Part shown: positions 1,555-52,087 of the stretch, piece by piece
Layout: each line of letters starts with the position of its first letter
How positions within the stretch are numbered: the first letter of the stretch is position 1
From: Prasinococcaceae sp. CCMP 1430
Lineage: Eukaryota; Plantae; Prasinodermophyta
Length of the DNA stretch: 58,191 nucleotides
Reading direction: 5' to 3'
Assembly: GCA_013416795.1 (NCBI GenBank)
Contig: RQSC01001135.1
Location: 106,410 to 164,600, forward strand
The notes under the pieces: model-generated
Told to the model about the DNA's origin: nothing
The model's input: the letters and a program-made list of their open reading frames with translations, nothing else
The model's database searches: none
Made by a program: the position numbers and the translations under genes

Positions 1555-2902
1555 NGCGGGGCAGGCGCGCGGCGCGCGAGCGCGGGCGTTTTTTTTTTTT
1601 TTTTCCCCGTTCTTCGCCCGGGCGCGGCGCCTGCCCCCCGCCTGTCCCTTTTTTCCGCGCCGCCCCTCCCGCGCGGCCGCCGCGGAAAAAGCGGCACGCG
1701 GGAAAAAGCCCGCGCGCCTCCGCGAACCGCCACCGAGGGTTCCAAACATACGTACCGAATCTGAAAATAAAGTGGAATCCATGCTCCGAACATTTATGCA
1801 ATGAAATAATGGTTTGACATGGAATCCCTGGCGAAGCTGCGCGCGGCGAGTCCCCCTTGCCAGCGGGGGCGTCCGCGCTCGCGCGGATTTCGCGGGCGGG
1901 CGAAACCGCGGATTGCGCGCCGCGCCGCGCGGGGGCCAACTGCCGCGCGCGCGTGGTTNNNNNNNNNNNNNNNNNNNNNNNNNNNNNNNNNNNNNNNNNN
2001 NNNNNNNNNNNNNNNNNNNNNNNNNNNNNNNNNNNNNNNNNNNNNNNNNNNNNNNNNNNNNNNNNNNNNNNNNNNNNNNNNNNNNNNNNNNNNNNNNNNN
2101 NNNNNNNNNNNNNNNNNNNNNNNNNNNNNNNNNNNNNNNNNNNNNNNNNNNNNNNNNNNNNNNNNNNNNNNNNNNNNNNNNNNNNNNNNNNNNNNNNNNN
2201 NNNNNNNNNNNNNNNNNNNNNNNNNNNNNNNNNNNNNNNNNNNNNNNNNNNNNNNNNNNNNNNNNNNNNNNNNNNNNNNNNNNNNNNNNNNNNNNNNNNN
2301 NNNNNNNNNNNNNNNNNNNNNNNNNNNNNNNNNNNNNNNNNNNNNNNNNNNNNNNNNNNNNNNNNNNNNNNNNNNNNNNNNNNNNNNNNNNNNNNNNNNN
2401 NNNNNNNNNNNNNNNNNNNNNNNNNNNNNNNNNNNNNNNNNNNNNNNNNNNNNNNNNNNNNNNNNNNNNNNNNNNNNNNNNNNNNNNNNNNNNNNNNNNN
2501 NNNNNNNNNNNNNNNNNNNNNNNNNNNNNNNNNNNNNNNNNNNNNNNNNNNNNNNNNNNNNNNNNNNNNNNNNNNNNNNNNNNNNNNNNNNNNNNNNNNN
2601 NNNNNNNNNNNNNNNNNNNNNNNNNNNNNNNNNNNNNNNNNNNNNNNNNNNNNNNNNNNNNNNNNNNNNNNNNNNNNNNNNNNNNNNNNNNNNNNNNNNN
2701 NNNNNNNNNNNNNNNNNNNNNNNNNNNNNNNNNNNNNNNNNNNNNNNNNNNNNNNNNNNNNNNNNNNNNNNNNNNNNNNNNNNNNNNNNNNNNNNNNNNN
2801 NNNNNNNNNNNNNNNNNNNNNNNNNNNNNNNNNNNNNNNNNNNNNNNNNNNNNNNNNNNNNNNNNNNNNNNNNNNNNNNNNNNNNNNNNNNNNNNNNNNN
2901 NN

Positions 2903-3848
2903 CGGCGACGCTGCCGTGCCGCGGCCGATGCCCTCACCGCCGCCCGCCGCGGCGGCGGCGGCGGTGCCGATGCTGCCCACGCAGGCCCAGGTGGGAAGCT
3001 ACGAGCACTCGGGCGCCGTGGCGCAGCCCCAGACCGAGCCCAGCGACCTCGACCGCGACGAGTACCAGACGGACCATTTTCGCATGTACGAGTTCAAGGT
3101 GCACATGTGCCCGAAGACCCGCGCGCACGACTGGACCGAGTGCCCCTTCGCGCACCCGGGCGAGAAGGCGCGCCGCCGCGACCCGCGCCGCTTCAAGTAC
3201 AGCGGCACGGCGTGCCCGGACTTCCGCAAGGGCGCGTGCCGCCGAGGCGACGCCTGCGAGTTCGCGCACGGCGTCTTCGAGTGCTGGCTGCACCCGAGCC
3301 GCTACCGCACGCAGCTCTGCAAGGACGGGCGCGCGTGCCCGCGGCGCGTGTGCTTCTTCGCCCACTGCCCGAGTGAGCTGCGCGCGCCCGACAGCGTGCC
3401 GATGTGCATGCCCACGGCACCGCCGCGGACCGTGTCGCCGGGCAAGCCGGCCTCGGCGGCGGAGGCCGTGTCCGCCTCCGCACCGGGCGCGCCGATCACC
3501 GGTCCGCCGACGGTGGACTCCTCGCCCACGTCGGCGCTGTCGCTGGGCAGCTCGCCCAACGGTGGCTCGCCCAGCCACGGCAGCTCGCCCTCAAGCTCCA
3601 GCCTGCCCTCCAGCGCCACCCTCATGGGAGCGACCGCGGTGCCGTCCTCGTTGCCCGTGAGCGTCATCGAGTCGCTGAAGATGGCGAGCCTGCACCTGGG
3701 GGACACCGGCGCCTTCATGAGCAGCGAGGCCATCGATATGCCCCAGCTGCGCAAGGTGTCGCAGCCGTCGATGGCGCGCTCGGACTCGTACCTGCAGATG
3801 TGCCAGGAGAACTCAAATTGGGTGAGCTCGCTGTGCGGGGACGTCTGA
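2903..3848 (+). CDS. Plant-type arginine-rich tandem CCCH zinc-finger protein (RR-TZF); start at 2928 or inside the upstream gap
   Basis: [10 protein letters not shown]; CHCH motif [16 protein letters not shown]; [11 protein letters not shown]; CCCH1 C-x7-C-x5-C-x3-H ([19 protein letters not shown]); CCCH2 C-x5-C-x4-C-x3-H ([16 protein letters not shown]); Ser/Pro-rich tail. Confidence 0.93.
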
Positions 3849-15386: not shown

Positions 15387-16155
15387 ATGCCTACCATGAT
15401 GGTATGCTCGGCGCGCTTTGCAGACCCTGTACGGGGGAAACGCATGCGGTTTGACCTTTGGCAGAGTGCGCACGAAAACGCAGACGCAAACGCGGCGCGC
15501 GCGGTGTGCCTGCGTGTGTCGACGCTGGCGCGAGGTCGCGTGCGCCGACGCACTGTGGCGGCAGTGGTCCGCCGAAGCCTGGCCCGAGGACTCGCTCGCC
15601 GCGAGGGCCGCGCCCCCCGGGGAGGCGTGGAGGCGCAACGCGGGCCGGCGCGCGCTCGCGGCCATTCAGAACAGGGCCAACGGCGCGCGAGAGATGGGCC
15701 CTGGCGCGCTCAAGCTCAAGCTGGATGCGCCGCCGGCGCGCGGCGAAAGGGCTCGAGCGGGCGAGGGCGGCGGCGGCGAGAGCGCCGGCGCGTCGCTCGC
15801 CCGGTGGAAGGGGTACTACGAGCGGCGCATGCGGCGCGTGCGGGCGGGGGGCAATGGCGTGTTCCTGGTGCGCGAGGGGGCGCGCGTCTTCAAGGTAGAC
15901 GACGGCCGCATCGTGGGCGAGGTCACCTGGAGCGCGGCGCTGGGAGCAAGGGCCGCGGAGGCCTTCGGCAGTGGCGTGGGCGGGGACGGCAATGGCGCGT
16001 GTGCCTCTCCGCTGGACTGGCTGTTGGGGGACGCGGGGAGGTGCGAGCTCAGCCGGGGAGTCGAGTACATGCTTCAGGCGAAGGAGCTCGCCGTGCGTAA
16101 CATCACAGGCGCGCCCACGTGGCGCGCCCCGGACGCAGCGCACCCATCCGGGTGA
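15387..16155 (+). CDS. Hypothetical protein with a partial F-box-like motif; possible micro-exon 15387..15401 then 15484..16155
   Basis: CACVCRRWREVACADALWRQ matches the second half of an F-box; the LP..L first half was not found; YYERRMRR downstream. Confidence 0.5.
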
Positions 16156-16279: not shown

Positions 16280-18278
16280 TCAGGAGAAGACCATGTCCTC
16301 CATGCCCTTCTGCAGGCCCCAATTTTGCCGGAGCCACTGCGAGTATGCCATCGGCGAGCCGGGGTCGCCGCGCACGGCGATGGCCTCCTGCTCTCGCGCG
16401 CGCTCCTCAACTGCGTACAGCGCAAAAAGCAGCATGACGTAGTAGCGGTGCAGGGAGCGCAACGCTCGCACTGCCCAGTAGTCCGCGGTACGGGAGTCTG
16501 ACGCACGCTCGGCAACCTGGCTGCTGGCGGAGTCGCGCGCGGCGCGCACAGCTTGGCGACGAGCGCGCTCTGGCGCGCTGCGAATGCAATGCACGGCATC
16601 ACAGTGCGCAATGGCATCATCCAAGCGGGCCTTCACCTCCATCCCTTTCCGCACACCCAGCTGACGCAGGAGCCATAGCACGGGCGGAAACTCAGCGCGG
16701 TCGGGGTCGCCAACGCGCGAGCCTGCGAATGCCGCCGGGGGCTCCATCAAATGTGCAGGCGGCTCGACGCCGTTGCGCAGCCGCCACAGCAGGCATCCAA
16801 TCACCATTCCCATCGTGGCGCGATGCTTGCCTGTGTCACAAATGAACAGCAGCGCAGCGTCAACGCTGCTGCCCTCGTCGGCAGCGATCTTGCCGCCCGC
16901 GCGGAAGGCCCTCCAGCACGCATCTGCGATGGTGTCGAGCGCTCTGTCGTCAGGTGCCACGTCTGGCAGCGCAGTTGGGGCCCTAAGCAGCTCGGCGGCG
17001 GGCTGCGGCGGCAGCGAGCCGACGGCCTCCTCGAACGTTTTGAATGCGTCGCGCCCCGTGGCTATCACTTGGCGCGAAGCGATTTCGCCCGTAGACTCCT
17101 CGAAAGAAACCGCCAGCGAATCGCCCGCATCTGCGGCTGCCGCCGCACACTCCCCGCGCAGCCTGCGCTCCCGCCGCTCGAGTGACCACCTGCCCCCTGC
17201 GGGGTCGAAGGCGCCGCCGCTCGTGGCCGCGCCTCCTACCGGAGCGCCTGCCAGCGCGTGCCGTTCGCGTACCGTGCATGGCTTGTCACCGACGTATACC
17301 ACTGGCTCCGAACGCAGGGAGATGATCAGCACACGCCGGTGGGCATTATGCCGCAGCCCTTCCATGATGCGCCGCAGGCCCGACAGGGTGCACTGGCCGG
17401 CGCCGTAGACCGGGTCGCGGTCCTTGCAGCGCCGAAAATTCCACGCCCCCTGGTACAGCACCGCTCCCAGGCTCTCAGTGTGCACATCCCCCCACTCGTC
17501 GGCCTTGAGCGCCCGAGAACCAAGCACTTTCTGCGGCCAGTCTTGGAGCAGGTCACGAGGCGGCGGCGCGCTCGTGGCCAGCCAGTGGCTGAGCCAGCGG
17601 TATGGGTCGACCGGCTGAGCGGTGTACATCTCGGCGAGCGCCTCTACCAGCCCAGGCATCACCGTCTCAAGCAAAAAGTCCTGCGGCGAGAGGCTGTCGA
17701 GCGGGCCGCTCGGGAAAAGCAGTGCGATCTCGCGCGTGGCATCGGCGACGGTGGCGCTGGCGTGCACAGCGTTCCGGAGCGAGTCGGTGCCGTACAACGC
17801 GCGCAGTGACGATGGCGCAGAGTCTCGCGCCTCTTGCGGGTCTGTGGGGCCGCACAGCGCTCTCCAGCGCCGCACTGCACCCACTCCGCTCAGCACCATG
17901 GCATGACACTCGCTGCTGGACATGAAGTCGACCAGTACGCGGAAGGACGCCTGCGACTCGCGCCTGCGCCAGCGCGCGCGTGGGCGAACGTGCGCACAGT
18001 TGGTATAATTGCGCGTCAGGCGAGCACGCCGTGCCAACCAAGACGATCAGAGGGGAGCGCAGGCGTGCCCCCACGCGCAGTAGCGCTCGCGCGCGCAGCA
18101 GCGGTCCCGGTGCGCGCGCCGCGCCGACGCACTTGAGGTAGAGGCCGCTTGCGACTTCCGGCGTCAGTCGGGTGTCGATCCCGCGGCTCACGAATAGCCC
18201 TGCATTCTCGGCGATTGTCACGATGGCGTCGCGCGCGGCGAGCGCATCGGGCTTCACCAACGCAAGCGTTGCCTCCAT
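16280..18278 (-). CDS. NME5-type nucleoside diphosphate kinase + Dpy-30 motif fused to a paladin-like PTP/phytase-fold phosphatase (609 aa); exons 18278..18133 and 17963..16280
   Basis: NDK: TLALVKPDA, LVDFMSS, WRALCGPTDP, LRALYGTDSLRNAVHAS. Dpy-30: FLLETVMPGLVEALAEMYTAQPVDPYRWLSHWL. Paladin-like: GAWNFR, VYGAGQ, LRSEPVVYV, FICDTGKHRATMGMVI (CX5R), LDDAIAHC, LHRYYVMLLFALY. Phase-2 intron 18132..17964. Confidence 0.88.
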
Positions 18279-19001
18279 TGCGCCCGCTGCCCTCCCCTTC
18301 CGCCCTCCAGCTCCCCACTCATCCACCCAGCCACCCACCCACAGCGTATGAGCGCTGCCGCGCGATCCGCGCCGCCAAACGCAGCACTCCCGCGCTCGCG
18401 CCGCTGGCGCCGCTGTCGCCCCGCTCGCTCTCATCCCCCTTCCACGCCGGACGCGGTGGCAGCATGCGCTCAACCTGCATCTGGCGCGGCCGCGCCGCGG
18501 AGGCAAAGGCGGCAGCGGGGCGGCGCCGGCGCCGCGGAGCGCGCCTCGCCGCCCGGGGGAACTTTTTGAATTTGTGCGGGAAAATCGCGACCGCGCGGCG
18601 GTGCCGGTGCCGCCGGTGTTGGCAACCGGCGATGAAATTCTTGGCATGAATTAAAACTCATATGTAATCGGCAGAACCTCCGTCGAAAATGGCGGGATGA
18701 CGCACGCGGTTCGTTCGGCGCCGATGTTCCCCCGTGCGCTCGCCCGCACCGCCCGGGGGAGCGGCGGCAGTGCGCGCGCGCGGCGGGCGGGCGCGCGAGA
18801 GAGGGGCGGAGAGGAGGTGAGGAGCGCGCAGGACGGCGTCGGCTCTCGCAGCAGCGCGCGCGCTCGAGCGAGAGCCCCCTTTGTCTTTACGAGCGGAAGC
18901 GTGGGCTGGCGAGTGCGGGCACGGATCTGACGCGCGCTGTTCTGACGCGCGGGCGTGTGCGCCCTCGCGTTGCTGCCGCCTCGAATCCAACTTTGCAGTC
19001 A

Positions 19002-22000
19002 ATGGCGCCCCCCTCGCCGGCGAAGTGGGTGCGCCCCATGTCATCCAAGGCAGCTGCATCGCGCTCCGCAGCTGCCGCGAGCGCCGGCGCGAGCAGCAGC
19101 GGCGGCGAGCTCGCGCTCGAAGGCACCACCCCACCGCACACGAGCGAGCCGGGCCCGCGCGCGCTCGCCACACCCGTGCGCAGCTCGCCGCTCAAGGCTG
19201 GCCCGCCGGGGGCTGGCCTCCAGAGTGCTCAGCCCGCGTCTGAACAGGCGCAGACAAAGACAATCGTGGGGCGGAGACCAGAGGTGAAGCTGGGTGCTGC
19301 GAAGGCGGACGCATCGAGGGGCTCGCGCGTGTCGGCTCACGCCGAGGCGCGGATGGCCATCCTGCGCAAGAGGGAGGAGATGCGCGCGCGCCGAGCGCGC
19401 GAAGCAGAGGAGGAGGCCGCGCGCGCCAAGGCCGCCCGCGATAAGGCGCGCGCCGCTGCCCGAGCTGAGCGCGAGAAGGCCGCGGCCAAGCTCAGGGCGC
19501 TCAGACGCCCGCGAGGCGCCCGCGCGGACACCGACGCCGGCGAGGGCGCAGGCGCAGGCGCTGGTACTTGTGCGATCGAGGGCAATGGGCCGTCTGAAGC
19601 GCAGACGAGTGTGCAGGCGCTCGCTGAGACACAGCAGCGCGTGCTGGGCGCGACGGGGATGTCGCCCGGTCTTTCGCCCGCAGGCAGCGCGTCGGGTGCT
19701 CAAGCAGCGCCTGTGGCGGCATCTCCTTCTCATGACGCGCCCAACGATAGCGACGCGGCACATCAGGCCGAGCTGCAGCTCGCTGCTCGCGACAAGCTGC
19801 TCGCAGCCCTGACGAGCGCGGGCGAGTCCGATGAGGTCGACCCGCAGCGCGACGTTCTACTCGCGGCACGAGTGCTGCTCGCAATGGACTCGCCCGAGCG
19901 TGGTGGTGCCGGCGCTGATATGTCGTCCGCTCTCGAGGAGTCGGTGCTTGCACTGGAGGCCGAAGAGGCTACCATGTTGGAAGCCGACGCGGGTATCGCG
20001 GCTGAGACCGAGGCGCCCGACGAACCCGCCAGCCCAGAGGCGTCACAGTCGCCGCCCATTGAGACGCAGGCGCGCTCGCGCGGCCACTCCAACACTGCCG
20101 AGGCCGAGGCCGGCACCGGCGCTGGCGACCGCACGGGCTTGGAAGAAGAGGCTCCGGCGTCCGTCACAACGGGACTCGCAATGTCGGAGTCAATCGCCGA
20201 ATTCCTTGAGCATGAGGCTCTTGCCGCCTCCGAGGTGCAAATCGCTGAGGCGGCGGCGATGAAGGCTGCTGATTCGGCGGTAGCTTCCATTGAACGTGCG
20301 CGAGCTGCTGCCAGCGGCGAAATGCACAGCGATGTCGAAGGCTCACCAGGGGTCTCCGAAACCCCCGCGACCGCCGCCGAGATTGACGTTGGGGGCAAGA
20401 GTGTCTTGGGAGAAGGCCTGGAGGTGGACAAATCGCACGCAGTCGTTGGCACCGACACGAAGCAATGTGCAGATGCGGTGGCAGGCAGTGACAGTTCGCC
20501 AGCTGCTTTTGCTGCGCCTGTCAACTTCGACGTCGCGGCTGGCGCTGGCGCAGATGGACTGGATCCTCACGCACCTACCGATGCGAGAGCTGCTACGGCC
20601 ACGTCTACTTCGCACGATGCCACAGCGGATGACAGCGTCGCTCGACGCTCGCTGCACACCGTGATGGCAACCGCGGCAAATAAAGGGAGTCCCGCGTCGA
20701 CACCGGCCAGAGTGGAAGGCAACCGCCACACGACTGGAGCGGCATCTTCGTCGGCGAAAGCCTCTCCTCCAATACCGTCTGCTGTGGTTTCGGCGATACC
20801 GCCCGCGCCCGCGCCCGCGCCCGCGCAGCCCGCGCCCGCACCTCCACAGGTGCCGCCTGCGCAGCCCTCACCGCCCCCGCCACAGGCTGTGAGCAGCTTC
20901 GCATCTGTGCTCGCCTACCTCGACCAAGTGGAAGCGGACATTACACCAGACTGGTCGGGGGCCCCGCCTGTCTCGACGTCGGTGCTTTCATCCCCGGCGC
21001 ACTCAACGCTATCTGTAGACACCACCTCGACGTGGGCAACAGGCGCCGCATACCCAGATCCGCCGTCAGGCGCAGGGGCGGGCGCACTGGTTACTGGTGC
21101 AGGGGCTGGCGGGGACGCTGCTGGCTACGCAGCTGTTGCCTACGGCAGCCTTCGTGGCAAAGTCAAAAGCCTTCGTGCCGCGCTGGATGCTTCGCGCTCG
21201 CGCGTATCACAGCTCGAGGCTGCAGCGCGTGATCAGCGCGCCAAGCACGCCCACGAGCTCGAACAAGTCCGATTCGAGGCCGAGATGGCCGCAGAGGCGG
21301 TGCGTACCGCGGCGGACGAGGCAAACGCGCGTAGCGTCGCCTTCATGGACAGGCTGCTCGCGGACAAGGATGCTCTCAGCGCCAGATGTGACAGCCTAGT
21401 GGCCGCTGCCGAGGAGATTGAGGCGGCGCACGCCCGCGCGACGGACGAGATGCGCGCATCGTGGCAGGGCGAATTGAAACGCCACCGCGATTCATGGGCT
21501 GCGGCCGAGCGCGTCAAGCGCGAGGCGTGGGAGTCGGACAAGGCCAGAGAGATCAAAGAGCTCACTATCAAGGTTAGCCAGCGCTCGCCAATTGGATCGC
21601 TTCGCACTAGCGCGCCGCGCCCCATTCACTCGCGGGCGCTCGCACGCTGACCCTATTGCCGCAACGTCTGGCGCAGGGCCTTGAGCCTGAAGTCCAGCGC
21701 CTGGTGGCCAAGCACAAAGCCGATGTGCGTCGTGCAGAGGTCCGCGCGCGTGAGGCCGCGCAGGCGCAGCTCGACGCGCAAGCTGTCGAACACGAGAGTT
21801 ACGTGCGACAGCTGCGCGAGCGCCTCGTGCGCGAACGAGACGATTTGCTGGAAAAAGAGCGCGCCGGGGCCGCTGAGAGACTGCGTGACGCCACCGCGCG
21901 CGCGGAGCATGCTGCTGAGGTGGCGCGTCAGCGCTTGCGCTCTGAGTTCGAAGCCAGACTCGATGAGGCGACGAGTGACGCTCGCGAGGCCAGGCGGGGT

Positions 22001-22902
22001 GTGGCCGATGCGGTAAAGCGCTCGGAATCTGAGGCCGAGCGGCGTGCGGTGGCTTTGGAAGCCGACGCGCGCGAGCGTGTGAGCGCTGCAGAGCGTGCAC
22101 ACGAGGCTGCGCGGGCAGCTTGGGAGAGGGAGACTGAGCAACGCATAGCCGAGGCGATCAGGTACGACGCGCACACGATGCCAAGGCCTCGGCGCATCTT
22201 TCTGGCTGGGTTTGCTCCCTGCATTCCGCTCCGCGTTCCTCTCCCTCTGACGCTCACTCCTTGACACAACGCGGCGCCACGCGCTGGAACGCGCGCACAC
22301 GTGTGCGCATCCCGTCGGGCGCGCATCGCAGCGAACGCGAGGCGAGCATCCGCTCCGTGTGCGAGGCGGAGCGCGACGCGCAGCTTGAGATGGTCGTTCG
22401 CCGCCTCGGTGAGGAGAGCGAGAGCGTTGCTGCCGCGGCGGCCGCAGGTGAGCGCTTGACCGCGCGCGAGCAGGTCGCCAAGGCGCGCCAAGAGGCATCC
22501 GAATCGGTGGCTCGCTTTCGTGACGAAGCCGAAGCGCGCGCGCGCGCGGAGGCCCGCGCGGAGAGCGCTGCCGCCGAGTGCAAGCGCCTCAGCGCTGCGA
22601 TGGCAGCGCTCGAGGGGCAGTCCGAGGCGGCTCGCGCGGAGGCGGCGCTCATCGACCGACGGAGGGACGCTGCTCTGCGCGACGCAGAAGCGCGCGCAAG
22701 CGACGCGGAGGAGCGGGCGCTGCGAGCGAACCGGGCGTCTGCTGCTGCGCAGGAGGCTGCGGTGGCCGAAGCAGCGGCGGTCGACGCACGCGTGCGCGCG
22801 GTGCTGGCGCAACGCGACGCCGCCATCCGGCAGCTCGCAGACGAGCTCGAGGCGGTGCGCGCGCAGACGGCCGAACTGCAACGGGAGGTGGCACATGAGT
22901 AG
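19002..22902 (+). CDS. CEP131: Centrosomal protein CEP131/AZI1; exons 19002..21572, 21677..22161, 22332..22902
   Basis: FMDRLLADKDALSARC; WAAAERVKREAWESDKAREIKELTIK/GLEPEVQRLVAKHK; AERDAQLEMVVRRL. Long low-complexity N-terminal half. Both introns restore the frame. Confidence 0.9.
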
Positions 22903-23217
22903 TCGCCGTGCGCCCCTCCCCCAACCCCACCCCACCCCAAGGTGCCCTCCCATATCAGTGCATTGTTTCACGCGCCTCTCGCACCGTCCAGCCCGCACGC
23001 TCGCCCGCCGCGAGCCGAGGCGCGCGCCGCCGCGCCCCCTCCGCGCGAGCGCGCTCCAGCCAGAGGCCGGCGGCGGCGNNNNNNNNNNNGCCGCGGGCGC
23101 AAGGCAAGAGCGGGGAGGGGGGGGGCGCCGGGGCGGCTCGGGCGCGCACCCGCGCGCGCGGGTGCGCGGGTGCGTGCGCCCGCGCGCTGGGGTTGGCCAG
23201 CGTGGTTCGCCTTCGTC

Positions 23218-29463: not shown

Positions 29464-30063
29464 CTTGCCCGTCAGCACGTCCATGAGGCTCGGCTGCCCC
29501 GGCGCCTCGGCGTCGTCCAGGAAGAGGTCATCCGGCGCGCGCATGGCGCCGTGGCCTGCGCAGAGCGCCGCTCCCACGAACGCGCTGGTGATCAGCGTCG
29601 AGCCCACGCCCGTGAAGAAGAAGATGAACAGCGCCGAGAGTGCACCCATGCCGTACAGCTTCTGCTGCGGCGTCACCTCATGGCCGTTCACCACCAGCGG
29701 GGCCTCGCCGCGGACCATGAAGACCCACACCCACGCGATGGCGAGCAGCGCCATCCACACGAGGCTGCTCGGGTTGAGCACGAGGCCGAGCGCGACGCTG
29801 CCCGCCGTGACCACGCCGTAGTTCACGCCGAAGTACGAGGCGTTTTTGCGCGCGCGCGTGATGGCCTCGCCCACCGTCGCCGGGCGCGAGAACGCGCTGC
29901 GGTCGGCGAGCTCCGTCCACGGGCGCCGGCGCGCGAGCGCGGCGCCGACGCGCTCCTTCACGACGGGCGCCGCCGCCTGCAGCGCCGTCACGGCGGCTCC
30001 GAAGCCCGCCTGCGCGCCGCCACTCGCGCTCGAGATGGCGGTGGTTCCCGCCATCTCCGTCAT
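29464..30063 (-). CDS. PRA1: PRA1 (prenylated Rab acceptor 1) family protein; short 3' exon unresolved
   Basis: RRPWTELADRSAFSRP; RARKNASYFGVNY; two hydrophobic hairpins; GHGAMRAPDDLFLD. Likely donor AAG|GTGCG at 29463. Confidence 0.92.
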
Positions 30064-30786
30064 CGCGCGCGCCGCGCGCTCTCAGGCGGCGAAGCGACGC
30101 CGCGGTGCCGGCGCGCGCCGGCGCGTGCGNNNNNNNNNNNNNNNNNNNNNNNNNNNNNNNNNNNNNNNNNNNNNNNNNNNNNNNNNNNNNNNNNNNNNNN
30201 NNNNNNNNNNNNNNNNNNNNNNNNNNNNNNNNNNNNNNNNNNNNNNNNNNNNNNNNNNNNNNNNNNNNNNNNNNNNNNNNNNNNNNNNNNNNNNNNNNNN
30301 NNNNNNNNNNNNNNNNNNNNNNNNNNNNNNNNNNNNNNNNNNNNNNNNNNNNNNNNNNNNNNNNNNNNNNNNNNNNNNNNNNNNNNNNNNNNNNNNNNNN
30401 NNNNNNNNNNNNNNNNNNNNNNNNNNNNNNNNNNNNCGCGCGCGCGCGCGCGCGTGCCGCCCCGGGGAACTCGGTCGGGGAACGGCGCCCCCACGCTGCG
30501 CGACGCGCGCGCGCGCGCCAATCACCGCGATGTCAGGTCATTCGCAATGCGTCAACGCGTACGGAAGGCGATTCGACGCGCGACGTTTCCGCGGGTTCGA
30601 ACGTCTCTCGCGAGACGTCAAAGTAAAAAAAAAAAAGGAATTTCATTTGGAAACGAGGTCGAAACCAAAACGCGCCGCGGAAAAAAAAAAGAGCGTGGAA
30701 TTTAAAAAAAGGGAGGCGACTGTTGGGGCCGCGCGCGCGCTCGGCAAATGCCGGCGCACCGACCCACACGCGCGCCGATTCCGTTT

Positions 30787-30904
30787 TTTTTTAAAGATTT
30801 TTAAAAATTATGGTGTTTTACATTCTTGTGCATTCGTTCTCTCTGGTGTCCGACTGTGTTTTTATTTTATTTTAATTCCCGTGTTATTTTACATTCTTGT
30901 GCAT
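30787..30904. repeat. AT-rich island with a duplicated 18-mer TTTTACATTCTTGTGCAT (30816..30833 and 30887..30904)
   Basis: Exact direct repeat inside T-tract-rich sequence. Confidence 0.8.
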
Positions 30905-31418
30905 CCGTAAATACGACATGTGCTGATGGTGTTTCCCGTGGTGTAGCATGTCCTTTGTTTCAGATTGTCGCGTGCGGTTTCGGGTTCCGTTCGCCGTCCC
31001 GGCCTTACCGCTGTTGCGCGCGCGGCACAGCCACACGCACACGAGCCCGGCAGCGGCGGCGCGCCGCGGCGGCCGCGGCAGCCTCGCTCCCGTCCCGCTC
31101 TAAGATCGAGCCAGCGCCGGCGTCGTGCGACAAAGAGGTTCGGCACCAGCCAGCCGGATCCACTACCATCCAGCCCCGCCTCCGACCGGACCCGGACCCG
31201 ACCGAGTGAGATGCTCTTCTGGCAGGCTGGACTGGACTGGCCGCGGCACATGCACGCAAACCCGCACGCCCACACGCCGACACCCCCCACCCACGCCCCC
31301 ACGCCCACGCGATGCGACACACACACCCAATTGACGCACAAACAAAACCGTCGAATGCGTGTGAAGCACCCCCATCCCCCACCTCTTACCAACCAAACGC
31401 CACGGCGACGAAGGGAAG

Positions 31419-37900: not shown

Positions 37901-40900
37901 GCTCGGCGGTCTCGGCGGCGGCGGCGGCGCCTCGGTGGCGACGTCCGCGCTCAGGTGCTCGAAGTACGCCGCCGCGGCGCCAGCAGCCGAACCGCCCGCA
38001 CAGATCTCGTACCTGCACGAGTCGGCCCAGGCGTCCAGGCTGTCGACGAGGGAGCTCCATCCGCGGGCGCGCTCCTGCGTGCAGGCCAGGTCGGCGGCTT
38101 CGGCCCTGTTGGATCCGCAGACGTCTCGGGCGGCAACCGCAGGGGTCACCGCCCTGTCGGCGTCGCCGTCCGCCCCTGGCGGGCACCATCCGCCCGCCGA
38201 GGGGGAAGCGGCCGGCTCCCACGCGGCAGCCAGGCCGCTGCACATGCCCGCGTCGTCGACCCCCAAAGGGAGCGCCAGGCGAGTCGTCAGCCTTCCGTCG
38301 TGGTTGACGATCACGACGTGACCCTCGTAGGCGTCCTCGACGATAAGCATGGGCGGAAGCTCCGACGACGCGTCGTAGGATGAGTCCAACGTCCAGAGGG
38401 CGTGCGTGCCGGGCCACACGACGGTGGTGTCGTCGTTGGGCTCCAGCGCGCCGCCATCGGGGAGGGTCACGGAGAGACCGCCCGTACCGTCGGCGTCCAC
38501 CTGCAGGGCGCCAGGGAATTCGGCGTCGAAGACGCGCACGGAGGTGACCACGCCGTCCGCGACGCACGCGCGCACGGCGGTCTTGACGGTGCTCCACAGC
38601 TCGAACTCACCGGCGATGCCAGGCGCGACCGAGGGCGCAGCGCCGTCCACGAGCAGCTGCGCGTTGCCGAAGAGCGAGCACACGGTCGACCGGGGGCGTG
38701 ACGCGTAATTCACCACGCGCGCGGCGACGAGCTGGAAGTTGTAGTCCAAGGTCTCGCCTGTCAGGGTGTTATGCGTGCTGATGGTGTAGCGGGTCGCCTC
38801 ACCGAAGGTGGACGAAACGTTGAGGTCGATCGGGACGCCGCTGTAGACCTCCTGGCTTTCGTCGCTCTGCGCGAGCGAAAGCGCTCGCGCGCGCCGCGCA
38901 CCGGCCTCGCCACCGGTGTGAAAGATCACCGTCGCAATGATGTGCGGGGGGAGGTCGAGCGTGACCTGGAAGCTCTCGCCAGCGTTGGGCATCGCCACCG
39001 AATAGTTGTAAACCTCCGGGGTGAAGGGCGGGTGCACCACGGGATCCTCCTCGTACGGCTCGGCGCTAGCCCGCGGGGGCGGGAGAAATCCGATGCTGAA
39101 TCCGTACTCCTCGAGCATCTCGTCGGCCGATGGCGCGAACGACGAGGCAAAGCTGAGCTTGTTGATCGTAATCTCCACCGGGGGCGGCGGTGGGCTCGGC
39201 GGCGGCGGGCTCGGCGGTGGCGGGCTCGGCGGGCTCGGCGGCGGTGGCGGGCTCGGCGGCGGCGGAGGACTTGGCGGGCTCGGTGGCGGTGGCGGCGGCG
39301 GGCTCGGTGGCGGCGGGGCGAACGCCGAGGTGGCGACCGTGAGGGAGTCTACCTCGTCTCCAATTTTGAGCGACACGCGCAGGGTCTCGCCCCAGAACCG
39401 CGCCCTGAGCCGCACACGCACCCGATCGCCCTTCTCCACAAGCTCCCCCGAGCTGCTGATCGCCACGAAGGCACCCGCTCCGCTCCGCTGGACCTCCATG
39501 TATGCCTCGCGCTCCTCGGGCGCCGGGCCCATGCCGGACAAGCCCAAGTGAAGCGACGCCGTGACCCGCGCCCCAGCCGTGGCGGGCTTGACCTTGATAC
39601 TCTCAGATGTCATCCACTCGTACGCGACGGCCTTGGTCCAGCTGTCGCCCAGCTCGAAGGGGGCGACGTCCGTCAAGGGTGGCGGGCTCGGCGGTGGTGG
39701 CGGGCTCGGCGGCGGCGGGCTCGGCGGCGGCGAGGGGCTCGGCGGCGGCGGGCTCGGNNNNNNNNNNNNNNNNNNNNNNNNNNNNNNNNNNNNNNNNNNN
39801 NNNNNNNNNNNNNNNNNNNNNNNNNNNNNNNNNNNNNNNNNNNNNNNNNNNNNNNNNNNNNNNNNNNNNNNNNNNNNNNNNNNNNNNNNNNNNNNNNNNN
39901 NNNNNNNNNNNNNNNNNNNNNNNNNNNNNNNNNNNNNNNNNNNNNNNNNNNNNNNNNNNNNNNNNNNNNNNNNNNNNNNNNNNNNNNNNCGGGCTCGGCG
40001 GCGGTGGAGGCGGCGGTGGCGGCGGCGGGCTCGGCGGGCTCGGCGGCGGCGGGCTGCACGTCATGGGGCTGCCGGGTGACGTGCATGGCGCCGGCGGCGG
40101 GCTGGGCGGTGACGGGGGCGGCGGGCTCGGAATGGCATCAGCGAGCACCATGCACGTGCCCTCGTCGAAGTCGCCCAGGCTCGACGCCTGGCGAACGCAC
40201 TGCGTGGTCACCGTGTACGCGTCCAAGATGTGTTGCCCGTCCCCAAGCGCGAGGGTCTCGTCGAAATCGCAGGCGCCCGTCTCATTGACGCCAGTCTGAT
40301 TGGCGCACCAGTCGAACGCGTCCTGATTGGTTCCGTCCAGCGGGATGACGTGCGGGCAGTCGGCCGAAGACACCTGGGTTAGCTCCTGGCCGCAGTCGGG
40401 GTCCCAAATGCCACAGTCGCAATTGCACGTGGTGCCATCCTCGTAGAGGTCAGCATCGCAGAGCCACTCGACCGGAACGTTCGACAGCTCGGTGCCCACT
40501 TCGAGCACCGCACTCTCATCGATCCCTTCCACGTTCGCCACGAGCGCACCCGGATCCGAAGCGATGGCCGTGTTGAAGACCTCCATGGCCTCGGCCAGGT
40601 CCTCGTACGCAGCGTCCGCTGCCTCGCTCTCGGCTTCGATGAGCTCGCTTTCGGTCGTGTCCGAGACGTCCACGATGGTCGTGGACTCTTCCTCGTCGAT
40701 GGCGAAATCGATCGAGATCCCCTCCTCGTCCTCGGCAAGCATGCGATACACCCTGTGGAACCCCATGAGCCGCCGCCGCGAGTGGGTGTCGATGTTGTTT
40801 GGGTCCCGCTGGCTCACGCCCACGATGCGGATGCGCGACCTCGGGACGTTCATGAGCAGCGCGATGTTGCTCACGAGGCCCTCCTCTCCGGTCGCATAGA

Positions 40901-49900: not shown

Positions 49901-51255
49901 CGCGGGCGAGGCACCGTCGGCGGCCCGGCCCGCAGCGAGCGCGTCGATGTCGTCGTCGCCCGAGACCTCGCACTCGAGCCAGGTGCCGTCGCTCGCGCGC
50001 GACACCACGGCGCAGTCCGCGCCGCCACCGGAGTGCCGCTCCGCAAGGGTGATACTCGCTACCTCGCCCAGGAGCGTGCCCTCTACGCGCAGGCGCCGGG
50101 CGCCCACCGCTGTGATTGACGTCGCGCTGGCGACCACTTGCAAGGCGGAGGTCCCCGACGCCTTGGTGTAGGTGAGGTGTGACGACGCCGGGGGCATCCC
50201 CGTGTGCCACGGCTTGACGCCAAACCGGGCAGGCATCGAGACGCCGGCGCCCCTGAGGGCGCTGTCCACGCCGCCGCCGAAGTTGACCGACAGCGGATAG
50301 TGGCCCGCCGGCAGGTCGGCAGGGATTCTGCACTGGAAGGCGGACTGCACGCAGTGGCAGCCCTGCCTGTTGCACTCGACGCCGGTTCGGCCGTTGAAGT
50401 AGTGGTCGGGGTGGGTCACGACCGCCTGGTAGAAGGCCCCCAGCCCGTACGGGGACGGCCTGCGGAGCTCACACGAGAAGTTGCCGCCCAGGCCCACGCG
50501 CGCGACGTTGGCGAGCGCGGGCAGGCGCTCGGACTCGGCCACGCCCACGCCAAAGGTCCTCAGGGCGAGCGCGAGCTCGGCGTCCTCGTCTTCGAAGGCG
50601 ATCGCCTCGCCCTCCTCGTCCACCTCGGAGGATCGGCCCGAAAGCACGTCAGCGAAGCACATGTGCCCGCCGACGGTGATGACGTCGCCGGGCGACGCCG
50701 CCTTGGTGGCGTGGGTGATCCTGGGCGTCAGGCGGCTCGACTGCTCGAAGAGGCACCTGTTGTTCCCCGCACCACAGCTGCCGGTGTTCCACCTTGGAGC
50801 CCCGTTTCTCGTCTGAACGCTGCCGCCCTGGCCGTCGATGTAGACGTAGACGAAGGAATCTCGGGCTTGGCAGCCGCGCCCTGTGTACGGCCCGGCCGCG
50901 TCCGCGTAAAACAGCATCTCGGCGGCGGCGGCCTCGTCCAGCACCGGCCGCGTGACGCACACGAGCTTGGTGGGGTTGCTCAGGTAGTGGATGACGTCGC
51001 ATGTGTTGCCCATGGGCGAGCCAAGACGCACGACGACGCGCTCGGAGAGCGGCGCATCGCTGTCGGCCGCCAGCGACGCCGGCCATAGGTTCGTCCCCCT
51101 GATGGTCAGGCGCGTGCCGCCCAGCAGCGACCCGCCGCGGGGCTCGACCGAGCTGACCGTCGGCAGCGCGGCGAGCGCCGGCCTCAGGGCGGGGCTCGCG
51201 CACAGCAGCAGCGCCGCGAGGAGAGCCCCCGCGAGCGCCGATGCCGATGCGCCGC
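37853..51255 (-). CDS. Giant fibrocystin-L/PKHD1L1-like cell-surface protein (~4,400-4,600 aa): signal peptide, IPT/TIG, PA14, two G8 + beta-helix modules, PAN-like, Cys-rich, SPPP-rich, cadherin-like sandwich and VWD/C8-like; exons >51255..44101 and 43915..37853
   Basis: The frame is open upstream of 51031: ALLAALLLCASPALRPALA-ALPTVSSVEPRGGSLLGGTRLTIRG. G8-1 HRWSDVATWGG..VYIPANTTLVLD; GQAYALGRYPFHIH; AIHKTFNRAIT; GHQYFVEDGIETGN; G8-2 VIIKSGWTVTL..LIIGTEEAPF; SEDDFY..LVSNIALLMNVPRSRIRIV. Phase-1 intron 44100..43916. The frame across the 39758-39989 gap cannot be determined; the ATG lies in the 51256-51536 gap. Confidence 0.88.
39180..40130 (-). repeat. Ser-Pro3-5 (extensin/HRGP-like) coding repeats of the giant protein: 39180..39316 and 39676..40130 (gap inside); a further block at 37865..37930
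   Basis: (CCG AGC CCG CCG..) arrays translating as SPPPP. Confidence 0.9.
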
Positions 51256-51732
51256 NNNNNNNNNNNNNNNNNNNNNNNNNNNNNNNNNNNNNNNNNNNNN
51301 NNNNNNNNNNNNNNNNNNNNNNNNNNNNNNNNNNNNNNNNNNNNNNNNNNNNNNNNNNNNNNNNNNNNNNNNNNNNNNNNNNNNNNNNNNNNNNNNNNNN
51401 NNNNNNNNNNNNNNNNNNNNNNNNNNNNNNNNNNNNNNNNNNNNNNNNNNNNNNNNNNNNNNNNNNNNNNNNNNNNNNNNNNNNNNNNNNNNNNNNNNNN
51501 NNNNNNNNNNNNNNNNNNNNNNNNNNNNNNNNNNNNCGGCCGGCCCAGGGCCGAACCCGAGCCCGCGGCCCCGCGGCCCGCGCCGGAGCGCGGACCGCGC
51601 AAAACGCGGATGAATCTCCCTACCAAAAACGCTCGCGCGCGCGGTCACGGTCGCGGTGGTTGTACGCGGGACGGGGGCGGGATTGTAACCGCTCATCGGA
51701 CCCCGTTTCATCAATCAATCTCAATCTCAATC

Positions 51733-52087
51733 TCAGCCCCCAACCAACCAGGGAGTGCCACCATCAGACTGGGTGTACGACGTGGTGGGAAGCCAGCCGG
51801 CCGCGTAGGGAGTTCGTAGGTCAGACAGGAGCTGACTGCCAGACTGACTGATGGGTGGGTGTACGTGTGTGTGTGTGTGTGTGTGTGTGAGTGTGTGCGT
51901 GTGTGTGTGGGTGTACGCGCGTGCAAGCGTGTGTGCAAGGGTGTGTGCAAGTGTGTGTGCGCACGCGTACGATTGTGCAGCAAGCGTCAGAGCATGCGTG
52001 TGTGTGTATGTGTATTTGCGCGCGCGCGTGTGTGTTTGTGTGTGCACGCGCGAGCGCCCGCGCACCTTGGCCTGCTCGTCCGACATG
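51733..52087 (-). CDS. Possible small spliced ORF beginning MSDEQAK, followed by a GTGCGC donor
   Basis: ATG TCG GAC GAG CAG GCC AAG|GTGCGC at 52087..52067, using the same donor type as other genes here. The second exon is ambiguous among several CAG acceptors near 51840-51850. Confidence 0.25.
51865..52050. repeat. Degenerate (GT)n/(CA)n microsatellite region
   Basis: Direct reading; possibly the intron of a small minus-strand gene. Confidence 0.85.

What the first reader, a model, noticed from the sequence alone, without database searches (positions are those of the whole stretch)
16280..18278. NME5/RSP23-type NDP kinase-Dpy30 fused to a paladin-like CX5R phosphatase
Seen: one open exon (17963..16280) carries the NDK C-terminal half, the Dpy-30 motif and a full paladin-type unit, with the NDK phospho-His (NAVHAS) and an intact P-loop C-D-T-G-K-H-R, so the fusion is not a splice-prediction artefact. 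Known: NDK+Dpy-30 is the NME5/radial-spoke architecture; paladin-family proteins normally carry tandem PTP/phytase-like units and act on phosphoinositides or inositol phosphates. Inference: a phosphotransferase and a lipid/inositol-phosphate phosphatase in one chain, potentially docked to the axoneme via Dpy-30. I do not recall this combination being described.
Basis: partly seen in the sequence, partly recalled or inferred. Interest (0 to 1): 0.8.

Follow-up and report, generated by a model that had tools for sequence, protein, structure and literature searches.

The report
NME5-type kinase fused to paladin phosphatase
This green-alga gene really does encode one protein that joins a cilium-type nucleoside diphosphate kinase and its Dpy-30 docking motif to a single paladin-type phosphatase unit. 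The same undescribed fusion occurs in several unrelated flagellated protists, which hints that paladin and the radial-spoke kinase work together.

Summary
A two-exon gene on the minus strand (18278..18133 and 17963..16280, 609 aa) encodes three parts:
- an NDK domain that keeps its catalytic His;
- a Dpy-30 motif;
- one complete paladin-type PTP-like-phytase unit with a C-x5-R loop.

All three pass Pfam thresholds. The C-terminal 412 aa model at pLDDT 90.5. Their best structural matches are vertebrate paladin unit 1 and bacterial PTP-like inositol phosphatases.

The window matches Prasinoderma coloniale gene model PRCOL_00006887. That model wrongly splices out 46 conserved residues.

The fusion is not unique to this genome. 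At least 17 clusters (50% identity) carry it, including intron-less single ORFs in marine picoeukaryotes and transcripts of Palpitomonas and Cantina. Their paladin units form one clade apart from free three-unit paladins, which points to a single old fusion.

Databases name these proteins only "nucleoside diphosphate kinase". No paper I could search describes the fusion.

Function is inferred, not shown. Most likely it is a Dpy-30-dimerised, flagellum-associated NME5/RSP23-like scaffold that carries a phosphate-binding or phosphatase module.

Two caveats apply. The canonical general-acid Asp is replaced here, and across the family either the NDK His or that Asp is often lost. I rate it a new variant of known kinds, of moderate interest.

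The parts
18133..18278 (-). Exon 1: start codon and NDK residues 1-49 (includes the KPD lysine motif). It ends in phase 2 (AA|GT).
   Evidence: Sequence; Pfam NDK profile positions 1-50; same junction as public model P0002.
17964..18132 (-). Intron, 169 nt, GTGCGT...CAG.
   Evidence: Sequence. The joined reading restores a colinear NDK domain that aligns with intron-less homologues. No RNA read across the junction was obtained.
17699..17963 (-). Exon 2, first part: the rest of the NDK domain (about residues 50-137). The catalytic His116 codon lies at 17764..17762 in the motif R-N-A-V-H-A-S.
   Evidence: Pfam; alignment to NME5/NME7/RSP23 chains; His invariant in the green clade.
17498..17605 (-). 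Dpy-30 motif (residues 169-204), a dimerisation and docking helix pair.
   Evidence: Pfam PF05186, 7.5e-07, above its cut-off; aligned with the Dpy-30 part of NME5 chains 8j07_X, 9fqr_HX and 8wzb_E.
16283..17518 (-). One complete paladin-type PTP-like-phytase unit (residues 198-609), including the W-N-F-R-R entry motif and the C-terminal helical bundle.
   Evidence: AlphaFold model at pLDDT 90.5, pTM 0.92. The top 35 PDB matches are all PTP-like myo-inositol phosphatases. Vertebrate paladin residues ~99-470 match at TM 0.71-0.75. Profile-to-PDB E-values run from 9e-18 to 2e-11.
16820..16840 (-). P-loop C-D-T-G-K-H-R (Cys424...Arg430), followed by A-T-M-G-M.
   Evidence: Sequence. It aligns with C252...R258 of the Selenomonas phytase. 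Cys and Arg are present in 69 of 69 free paladin units and in nearly all fusion proteins.
16961..16966 (-). General-acid position: Pro382-Asp383, in the motif R-A-P-T-A-L-P-D-V-A-P. The column that holds D223 of the Selenomonas phytase is Pro here, and an Asp follows after a one-residue insertion.
   Evidence: Alignments.
16517..16654 (-). A 138-nt coding segment (46 aa) that the public gene model PRCOL_00006887 removes as an intron. It is coding sequence.
   Evidence: It is conserved in all homologues, contains nearly invariant paladin residues G292/K296/D300/R313 of the unit, and forms well-modelled helices at block pLDDT 93-98. A metatranscriptome contig, 16620-16792, runs unspliced across the proposed donor.

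Best explanation
What is shown: this is a real, conserved, single-chain gene. It is the Prasinoderma coloniale member of an old and so far undescribed protein family. In this family an NME5/RSP23-type (group II) nucleoside diphosphate kinase domain and its Dpy-30 dimerisation/docking motif are followed by one paladin-type, cysteine-based PTP-like-phytase unit.

How it most likely works (inferred):
1. The NDK-Dpy-30 half serves mainly as a structural and docking module. The Dpy-30 helices pair two chains and clamp an amphipathic helix of an anchoring protein. In flagellates the best candidate is RSP3 of the radial spoke, which the P. coloniale genome retains.
2. Docking places two paladin units side by side, mimicking the tandem units of free paladins, at or near the axoneme of a rarely formed flagellate stage.
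3. There the C-x5-R pocket binds, and probably slowly hydrolyses, a poly-phosphorylated small ligand such as an inositol polyphosphate or pyrophosphate, or a PI(4,5)P2-type head group.
4. In this alga the NDK site keeps all its catalytic residues and may still autophosphorylate. In the wider family that activity is dispensable.
For: Gene and fusion are real:
- One ORF holds all three domains.
- Marine relatives have intron-less single ORFs of 593-668 aa with the same three domains.
- Assembled transcripts with complete ORFs exist in Palpitomonas bilix and Cantina marsupialis.
- Metatranscriptome contigs lie over the Dpy-30/paladin junction, 17434-17599.

Family and single origin:
- At least 17 clusters at 50% identity give a single full-length match.
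- The 19 fusion paladin units form one group with SH-aLRT 100, apart from units 1-3 of free paladins.

NME5 nature of the N-terminal half.

Paladin nature of the C-terminal half.

Structural rather than enzymatic role for the NDK:
- The catalytic His is replaced in 8 of 18 family members.
- Chlamydomonas NDK5/RSP23 rescues its mutant without H121 (PMC5662260).

Link to cilia:
- Dpy-30 of RSP23/RSP2 docks on RSP3 (PMC3494852, listed; PMC7024210).
- P. coloniale keeps 217 flagellar proteins, including RSP3 (PMC7455551).
- The named carriers are flagellates.
- Mammalian PALD1 enters primary cilia and is co-conserved with cilia (PMC8054476).
- The head-to-head neighbour gene carries a precomputed CEP131 coiled-coil hit in the 97%-identical strain.

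Substrate class:
- The nearest solved folds are inositol-phosphate phosphatases.
- Paladin immunoprecipitates dephosphorylate PI(4,5)P2 (PMC7857541).
Against: - There is no localisation, interaction or activity data for any member of this family.
- P. coloniale has never been seen with flagella. A culture-derived run labelled as probable RNA held no contig of this gene.
- The general-acid Asp of PTP-like phytases is Pro here and E/A/K in the marine clade. The unit may therefore bind rather than hydrolyse.
- NME5-like proteins also exist in red algae, which lack flagella, and there they are dispersed in the cell (PMC7024210). Dpy-30 motifs also serve non-ciliary complexes.
- The organisms behind most family members are unknown, so the correlation with flagella rests on three named taxa.
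- The NDK tree does not place the fusion NDKs with vertebrate NME5.
- The CEP131 neighbour hit could not be reproduced with the Pfam copy at hand. It appeared only at rank 21 of the atlas search.
Confidence: 0.55

Rival explanations
1. A cytosolic, non-flagellar signalling or metabolic enzyme. Dpy-30 only dimerises the chain. The NDK supplies or buffers NTPs, while the paladin unit turns over inositol phosphates or phosphoinositides on membranes, with no connection to the axoneme.
For: The NDK site is complete in this alga. A red-algal NME5-like protein is an active, dispersed NDPK fused to another nucleotide enzyme, adenylate kinase (PMC7024210). No flagellate stage is known for P. coloniale. 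Paladin acts at endosomes in endothelial cells.
Against: The NDK His is lost in about half of the family while the fusion persists, so kinase chemistry cannot be the conserved reason for the fusion. The named carriers are flagellates or keep flagellar genes. The best full-length structural relatives of the N-terminal half are radial-spoke subunits.
Confidence: 0.28
2. An internal phospho-relay. The paladin unit's Cys pocket acts on the phospho-histidine of the adjoining NDK domain, in its own chain or its dimer partner, or on NDK-phosphorylated protein targets. The fusion would then be a self-resetting phosphotransfer switch.
For: In the green clade the NDK His and the Cys/Arg P-loop are always retained together. 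Covalent linkage of a phosphoryl donor to a phosphatase fits a cycle. NDK5 function in Chlamydomonas involves 'protein phosphorylation-related reactions' (abstract of PMC5662260).
Against: Eight family members lack the His yet keep the paladin unit and its Cys/Arg. The nearest folds are specialised for inositol polyphosphates. Nothing is known about phospho-His activity in this phosphatase class.
Confidence: 0.1
3. A gene-prediction or assembly artefact: two neighbouring genes (an NME5 and a paladin fragment) read as one, or a decaying pseudogene in an alga that no longer makes flagella.
For: RNA support in this species is thin: three short metatranscriptome contigs that could be DNA carry-over. 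dN/dS against the 97%-identical strain is 0.37-0.5, based on few changes.
Against: The ORF is uninterrupted from the NDK C-terminal half through to the stop codon. The same order occurs in intron-less ORFs, in transcripts of distant taxa and in a 68%-identical sister species. Motifs are invariant across all three domains. No frameshift or stop occurs in any Prasinoderma-type copy.
Confidence: 0.02

Closest known systems
NME5 (vertebrates) and RSP23/NDK5 (Chlamydomonas), radial-spoke neck subunits
   Same: A group II NDK domain directly followed by a Dpy-30 motif. Alignment runs end to end over residues 2-183 with NME5 chains from axoneme structures (E 4e-32 to 1e-31) and with RSP23 (3e-23). 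It is 41% identical to a ray NME5. Like RSP23, it carries a long lineage-specific extension after Dpy-30.
   Different: The extension is a 412-aa folded phosphatase-type unit, not the calmodulin-binding IQ tail of Chlamydomonas and not the bare C-terminus of vertebrate NME5. Orthology by tree is unresolved. Location in a spoke is untested.
Paladin (PALD1) and protist/plant paladin-like proteins
   Same: The same unit: PF14566, the N-F-R entry motif, a C-x5-R-(S/T)-T loop, and a C-terminal helical bundle with the L-x-R-Y and W motifs. TM is 0.71-0.75 against residues ~99-470 of human, mouse, chicken, frog and fish paladin. Atlas and AFDB neighbours are all paladins.
   Different: There is one unit instead of two (vertebrates) or three (all protist paladins recovered here). 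There is no N-terminal myristoylation site. The fusion units form their own clade. In this alga's clade the P-loop is C-x-(D/T)-G-x-x-R rather than the usual C-Q-M-G-R-G-R, and the general-acid Asp is missing.
Bacterial PTP-like myo-inositol phosphatases (PhyA of Selenomonas and Mitsuokella, LppA of Legionella, the Desulfovibrio and Bdellovibrio enzymes)
   Same: The fold matches (TM by target 0.6-0.69; all of the top 35 PDB hits), and profile matches cover the acid loop and P-loop.
   Different: Sequence identity is only 11-17%. The unit here has extra helices. The catalytic D223 equivalent is not conserved. Substrate is unknown.
Ancestral-type NME5-like proteins with a C-terminal adenylate kinase domain (red alga Chondrus crispus and others)
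   Same: The same logic: a second phosphoryl-transfer enzyme is attached after NDK-Dpy-30 (PMC7024210).
   Different: The attached enzyme there is a kinase (ADK) and here a phosphatase-type unit. That survey of 37 NME architectures does not mention a PTP or phytase partner in its text.

Membership tests
NME5/RSP23 (group II NDK with Dpy-30) | NDK fold domain | tested here: met
   PF00334 at 4.2e-21 for exon 2, plus profile positions 1-50 in exon 1.
NME5/RSP23 (group II NDK with Dpy-30) | Dpy-30 motif directly after the NDK domain | tested here: met
   PF05186 at 29.2 bits against a cut-off of 22; colinear alignment with NME5 residues 13-198.
NME5/RSP23 (group II NDK with Dpy-30) | Orthology to NME5 rather than to NME7/8/9 in a tree | tested here: inconclusive
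   In a 105-row NDK tree the fusion NDKs group with other NDK+Dpy-30 domains (support 86). The one vertebrate NME5 falls elsewhere with weak support. Only 142 columns were usable and the sample was biased.
NME5/RSP23 (group II NDK with Dpy-30) | Residence in the radial-spoke neck through binding of the RSP3 amphipathic helix | not testable with these tools
   Context only: RSP3 is reported present in the P. coloniale genome (PMC7455551).
Active nucleoside diphosphate kinase | Catalytic histidine and the nucleotide-binding residues | tested here: met
   His116 lies in N-x-x-H. The K-P-D lysine, the Tyr, two Arg, Thr, Asn, Ser and Glu positions can be read in the sequence and alignment. Activity itself was not tested. 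Human NME5 is reported inactive.
Paladin family | PTPlike_phytase (PF14566) domain with a C-x5-R loop | tested here: met
   PF14566 at 4.5e-13 over the full profile; Cys424 and Arg430 are aligned with all 69 paladin units examined.
Paladin family | Whole-unit fold, including the C-terminal helical bundle | tested here: met
   TM 0.71-0.75 to vertebrate paladin unit 1, from a model at pLDDT 90.5.
Paladin family | Two or three tandem units in one chain | tested here: not met
   A single unit here. The free paladins recovered have three units (two in one 929-aa protein, P0206), and vertebrate paladin has two halves.
Paladin family | Placement among paladin units in a tree | tested here: not met
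   The fusion units form a separate group (SH-aLRT 100, branch length 0.64), not nested in unit 1, 2 or 3 of free paladins. They are a sister subfamily rather than ordinary paladins.
PTP-like phytases / catalytically competent Cys phosphatases | General-acid Asp in the loop before the P-loop (D223 of Selenomonas PhyA) | tested here: not met
   The aligned column is Pro382, with Asp383 adjacent after a one-residue insertion. The marine clade has E, A or K there. Only 32 of 69 free paladin units have Asp.
PTP-like phytases / catalytically competent Cys phosphatases | Hydrolysis of inositol phosphates or phosphoinositides | not testable with these tools
   Needs an enzyme assay.

The most novel reading that the evidence does not exclude
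The fusion is a 'Rosetta stone'. On this reading paladin and the NME5-type radial-spoke kinase are ancestral working partners in cilia, and the paladin pocket acts at the axoneme on an inositol pyrophosphate or phosphoinositide signal, or on NDK phospho-histidine. Vertebrate PALD1, whose job inside cilia is unknown, would then be expected to meet NME5 or the spoke neck there. The single, well-modelled unit of this family would be the simplest handle for finding paladin's true substrate.
Probability: 0.2. Interest if true: 0.8.

Novelty: new variant of a known kind. Interest (0 to 1): 0.55.

Why it matters
Paladin is conserved across eukaryotes, enters cilia and affects Hedgehog and VEGFR2 signalling, yet its substrate and ciliary role are unsettled. 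NME5/RSP23 is needed for radial spokes, but its kinase activity is dispensable there.

A conserved gene fusion of the two, found in three eukaryotic supergroups, gives independent genomic evidence that they share a pathway or a location. It yields concrete tests: does the Dpy-30 motif dock on RSP3, and is there a PALD1-NME5 interaction?

It also offers a compact single-unit paladin that models with high confidence, suitable for biochemistry and structure work.

More modestly, it corrects the public gene model, which deletes 46 conserved residues. It also adds a phosphatase-type partner to the list of enzymes attached after the Dpy-30 motif of NME5-like proteins, alongside adenylate kinase and IQ tails.

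Tried and rejected
1. Splice or assembly artefact: rejected. See the fourth rival explanation.
2. Naming the marine/estuarine clade (P0004-P0009): failed.
   - All records are metagenome contigs (TARA, estuary sets, NCBI metagenome assemblies GCA_001756385/GCA_001757025).
   - A paper search for the WGS prefixes found nothing.
   - The atlas gave no taxa for the family.
   - What can be said: local GC is 68-73%, the ORFs are intron-less, contigs reach 2.36 Mb, and the tree places the clade sister to the Prasinoderma copies. They are probably green picoalgae, but whether they are flagellate is unknown.
3. Word-indexed homologue searches with the family alignment and with the N-terminal half added little. 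No separate NME5 of P. coloniale turned up, but that search cannot prove absence.
4. NDK-domain phylogeny: unresolved.
5. Selection test against the 97%-identical strain: too few substitutions (dN/dS 0.37-0.5 from about 30 changes). The 68%-identical sister is too saturated to use.
6. RNA evidence in the species itself:
   - The best 'holder' runs are genomic DNA, because the intron is present.
   - A small run labelled as probable RNA has no contig of the gene.
   - No read crosses the exon 1/exon 2 junction.
7. A neat 'either kinase or phosphatase stays active' pattern was considered and dropped. Some members keep both the His and the Asp, and some keep neither.
8. CEP131 identity of the neighbouring gene could not be reproduced with the local Pfam copy. 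The atlas gave it only at rank 21.
9. Supplementary tables of the genome paper held as text do not list RSP23, NDK or this gene id.
10. Literature searches for the domain combination, and for PALD1 together with NME5, returned nothing.
Full report
**1. What is in the sequence**

On the minus strand an ORF is open from 18037 to the stop at 16282..16280. Pfam finds three families above their curated cut-offs in its translation:
- NDK: 4.2e-21, profile positions 50-132 only;
- Dpy-30: 7.5e-07;
- PTPlike_phytase PF14566: 4.5e-13, whole profile.

The missing first third of the NDK domain (profile positions 1-50) is encoded at 18278..18133.

Reading the DNA gives an ATG at 18278, a donor AA|GTGCGT after 18133 and an acceptor CAG| before 17963. 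Joining them gives a colinear NDK domain and a 609-aa protein. The exon junction is the one used in the public model P0002.

**2. Source and annotation**

The closest database protein is EukProt PRCOL_00006887-RA. It is identical to the window's product except that it lacks 46 residues, so the window is Prasinoderma coloniale.

The missing piece (16654..16517, bounded by GT..AG) is treated as an intron in that model. It is in fact coding sequence:
- It is present and conserved in every homologue.
- It contains residues that are nearly invariant in 89 paladin-type units.
- It forms two well-modelled helices (block pLDDT 93-98).
- A seawater metatranscriptome contig (16620-16792) runs through the proposed donor unspliced.

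**3. The fusion is real and conserved**

A word-indexed search found nine further proteins with the same three Pfam domains, at 33-97% identity.

In marine and estuarine metagenome contigs the orthologue is a single intron-less ORF of 593-668 aa. It sits in conserved synteny: a TPR gene, the fusion, a small ORF, then SRP54.

A 68%-identical sister species has the same two-exon layout, with its intron eight codons further downstream.

An exhaustive profile search of 1.84 billion representatives returned at least 17 clusters (50% identity) that match the whole profile in one stretch.

Look-ups of those clusters name two organisms:
- Palpitomonas bilix (Cryptista), two paralogue clusters from MMETSP transcripts;
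- Cantina marsupialis (a stramenopile), two clusters from Trinity transcripts.

The fused reading frame therefore exists in assembled mRNA of distant flagellates. Source annotations say only 'nucleoside diphosphate kinase' or, once, 'protein-tyrosine phosphatase/nucleoside diphosphate kinase'.

In P. coloniale itself RNA support is thin. Three short metatranscriptome contigs lie on the gene, one of them bridging the Dpy-30 motif and the start of the paladin unit (17434-17599). A small run labelled as probable RNA from the organism had none.

**4. The N-terminal half**

Against all PDB sequences, residues 1-195 match NME5 of human, bovine and mouse axonemes over residues 2-183, covering both NDK and Dpy-30 (E 4e-32 to 1e-31). 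They match Chlamydomonas RSP23 over residues 1-169 (3e-23). NME7 scores similarly only because it has two NDK domains. The best named free-standing relative is a vertebrate NME5, 41% identical over 97% of the query.

All the classical NDK catalytic positions can be read in the sequence.

A tree of NDK domains was too short to settle orthology.

Across the family the catalytic His is replaced in 8 of 18 members, by D, Y, E, N, R, Y, L or R. This fits the finding that Chlamydomonas NDK5 works in spoke assembly without H121 (PMC5662260).

**5. The C-terminal half**

With an 89-row alignment, the last 412 residues give an AlphaFold model at pLDDT 90.5 and pTM 0.92.
- The top 35 PDB matches are all PTP-like myo-inositol phosphatases or phytases, with TM by target up to 0.69.
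- In Swiss-Prot models the top five are vertebrate paladins, residues ~99-470, at TM 0.71-0.75.
- AFDB clusters and the ESM atlas return paladins only.
- A sequence profile of the unit reaches the solved phytases at 9e-18 to 2e-11. It aligns the family's R-x-P-x-x-D-E loop and C-x5-R-T-T loop with D223 and C252...R258 of the Selenomonas enzyme.

So this is one entire paladin unit. Free paladins recovered in the same search have three such units, and vertebrate paladin has two.

In a 101-row tree the 19 fusion units form one group (SH-aLRT 100), separate from units 1, 2 and 3 of free paladins (quick search, several rows with biased composition). One fusion event, followed by vertical descent or transfer, is the simplest reading.

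**6. Catalytic state of the paladin unit**

Cys424 and Arg430 are conserved here and almost everywhere: 69 of 69 free units, and all full-length fusions except one that lacks the Arg.

The general-acid column is Asp in the Palpitomonas/Cantina-type members. It is Pro382 here, with Asp383 next to it after a one-residue insertion, and E, A or K in the marine clade. Free paladin units also vary at that column (Asp 32, Pro 17, Ala 13 of 69).

The pocket is therefore kept, but fast hydrolysis is doubtful in this alga. I put an active phosphatase at roughly even odds against a phosphate-ligand-binding module.

No simple 'one or the other enzyme survives' rule holds. Some members keep both the NDK His and the Asp, and some keep neither.

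**7. Likely mechanism (inferred)**

- Dpy-30 motifs form dimers that clamp amphipathic helices. In Chlamydomonas the Dpy-30 domains of RSP2 and RSP23 bind RSP3 (PMC3494852; PMC7024210).
- P. coloniale has no known flagellate stage, yet it keeps 217 flagellar proteins including RSP3, IFT and dynein heavy chains (PMC7455551).
- The named carriers of the fusion are flagellates.
- Mammalian PALD1 accumulates in primary cilia and its phylogenetic profile follows cilia (PMC8054476).
- Paladin immunoprecipitates dephosphorylate PI(4,5)P2 but not phospho-peptides (PMC7857541).

Taken together, the most economical reading is a flagellum- or basal-body-associated NME5/RSP23-like scaffold. Its post-Dpy-30 extension holds a paladin unit here, IQ motifs in Chlamydomonas and adenylate kinase in red algae and others (PMC7024210). 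Dpy-30 dimerisation would pair two units, as the tandem arrangement does in free paladins.

A modest extra hint comes from the divergently transcribed neighbour (ORF from 18957, about 680 bp from the start codon). Its orthologue in the 97%-identical strain carries a precomputed CEP131 coiled-coil hit. I could not reproduce that hit locally.

**8. Against the mechanism**

Nothing here shows localisation, binding or activity. NME5-like proteins also exist in aflagellate red algae. Most family members come from unidentified organisms. A cytosolic role (28%) and an internal phospho-His relay (10%) remain open. An artefact is essentially excluded.

**9. Novelty**

Full-text searches found no paper holding the domain combination and no paper mentioning both PALD1 and NME5. 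A survey of 37 NME architectures does not mention a phosphatase partner in its text.

The proteins are in public databases under machine-given names. The architecture is thus undescribed rather than undiscovered. Both parts belong to known families, and the fusion defines a distinct paladin subfamily. I class it as a new variant of a known kind, with moderate interest (0.55). Its main value is as a Rosetta-stone lead on what paladin does in cilia.

Noticed in passing
window 16517-16654 (minus strand): The public gene model PRCOL_00006887-RA removes 138 nt (46 aa) as an intron. The segment is conserved coding sequence within the paladin unit, so the model is wrong.
   Followed up: yes
window 18957-22264 (plus strand); L025-L027 1-356: A divergent neighbour lies head to head with the fusion gene, about 680 bp from it. 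It comprises an 897-aa Ala-rich, coiled-coil ORF ending ...I-K-E-L-T-I-K, followed by an ORF containing G-L-E-P-E-V-Q-R-L-V-A-K-H-K. Its orthologue in the 97%-identical strain carries a precomputed Pfam hit to the CEP131 coiled coil, a centriolar-satellite/ciliogenesis protein. The local Pfam copy gave no hit, and the atlas gave a CEP131 cluster only at rank 21.
   Followed up: partly
L005 780-1220 versus window 17964-18132: The single intron in the NDK domain sits eight codons further downstream in the 68%-identical sister species. In both species it is phase 2 with a GTGCGT donor and a CAG acceptor. This may be intron sliding or independent gain.
   Followed up: partly
window 15418-16155 (plus strand): A 245-aa ORF converges on the 3' end of the fusion gene. 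It has a weak F-box-like match (22.2 bits, just under the cut-off of 24.3).
   Followed up: no
window about 2001-3000, 30001-31000, 39001-40000, 51001-52000, and X runs near 23050-23100: Dips in G+C come from runs of N (1,780 N in the window). These are assembly gaps inside an otherwise ~69% G+C sequence.
   Followed up: no
proteins P0091, P0092, P0094: The profile search surfaced proteins of 1,400-1,500 aa that match the fusion profile in seven separate stretches (P0091, P0092 and P0094; the local NDK-only scan counted seven NDK domains in P0091 and P0092), and others with three NDK domains followed by a Dpy-30 motif. These are unusual multi-NDK architectures from unnamed organisms.
   Followed up: no
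proteins P0107-P0236: Nearly all the free protist paladins recovered have three tandem units (one, P0206, has two). Every unit keeps the Cys and Arg, but only about half keep the general-acid Asp. This suggests a regular mix of active and inactive units within one chain.
   Followed up: partly
L001-L004, L009-L024: The marine/estuarine orthologues lie in conserved synteny (a TPR gene, the fusion, a 172-199-aa ORF, then SRP54) on contigs of up to 2.36 Mb at 68-73% local G+C. The organism is abundant in TARA samples but could not be named.
   Followed up: partly
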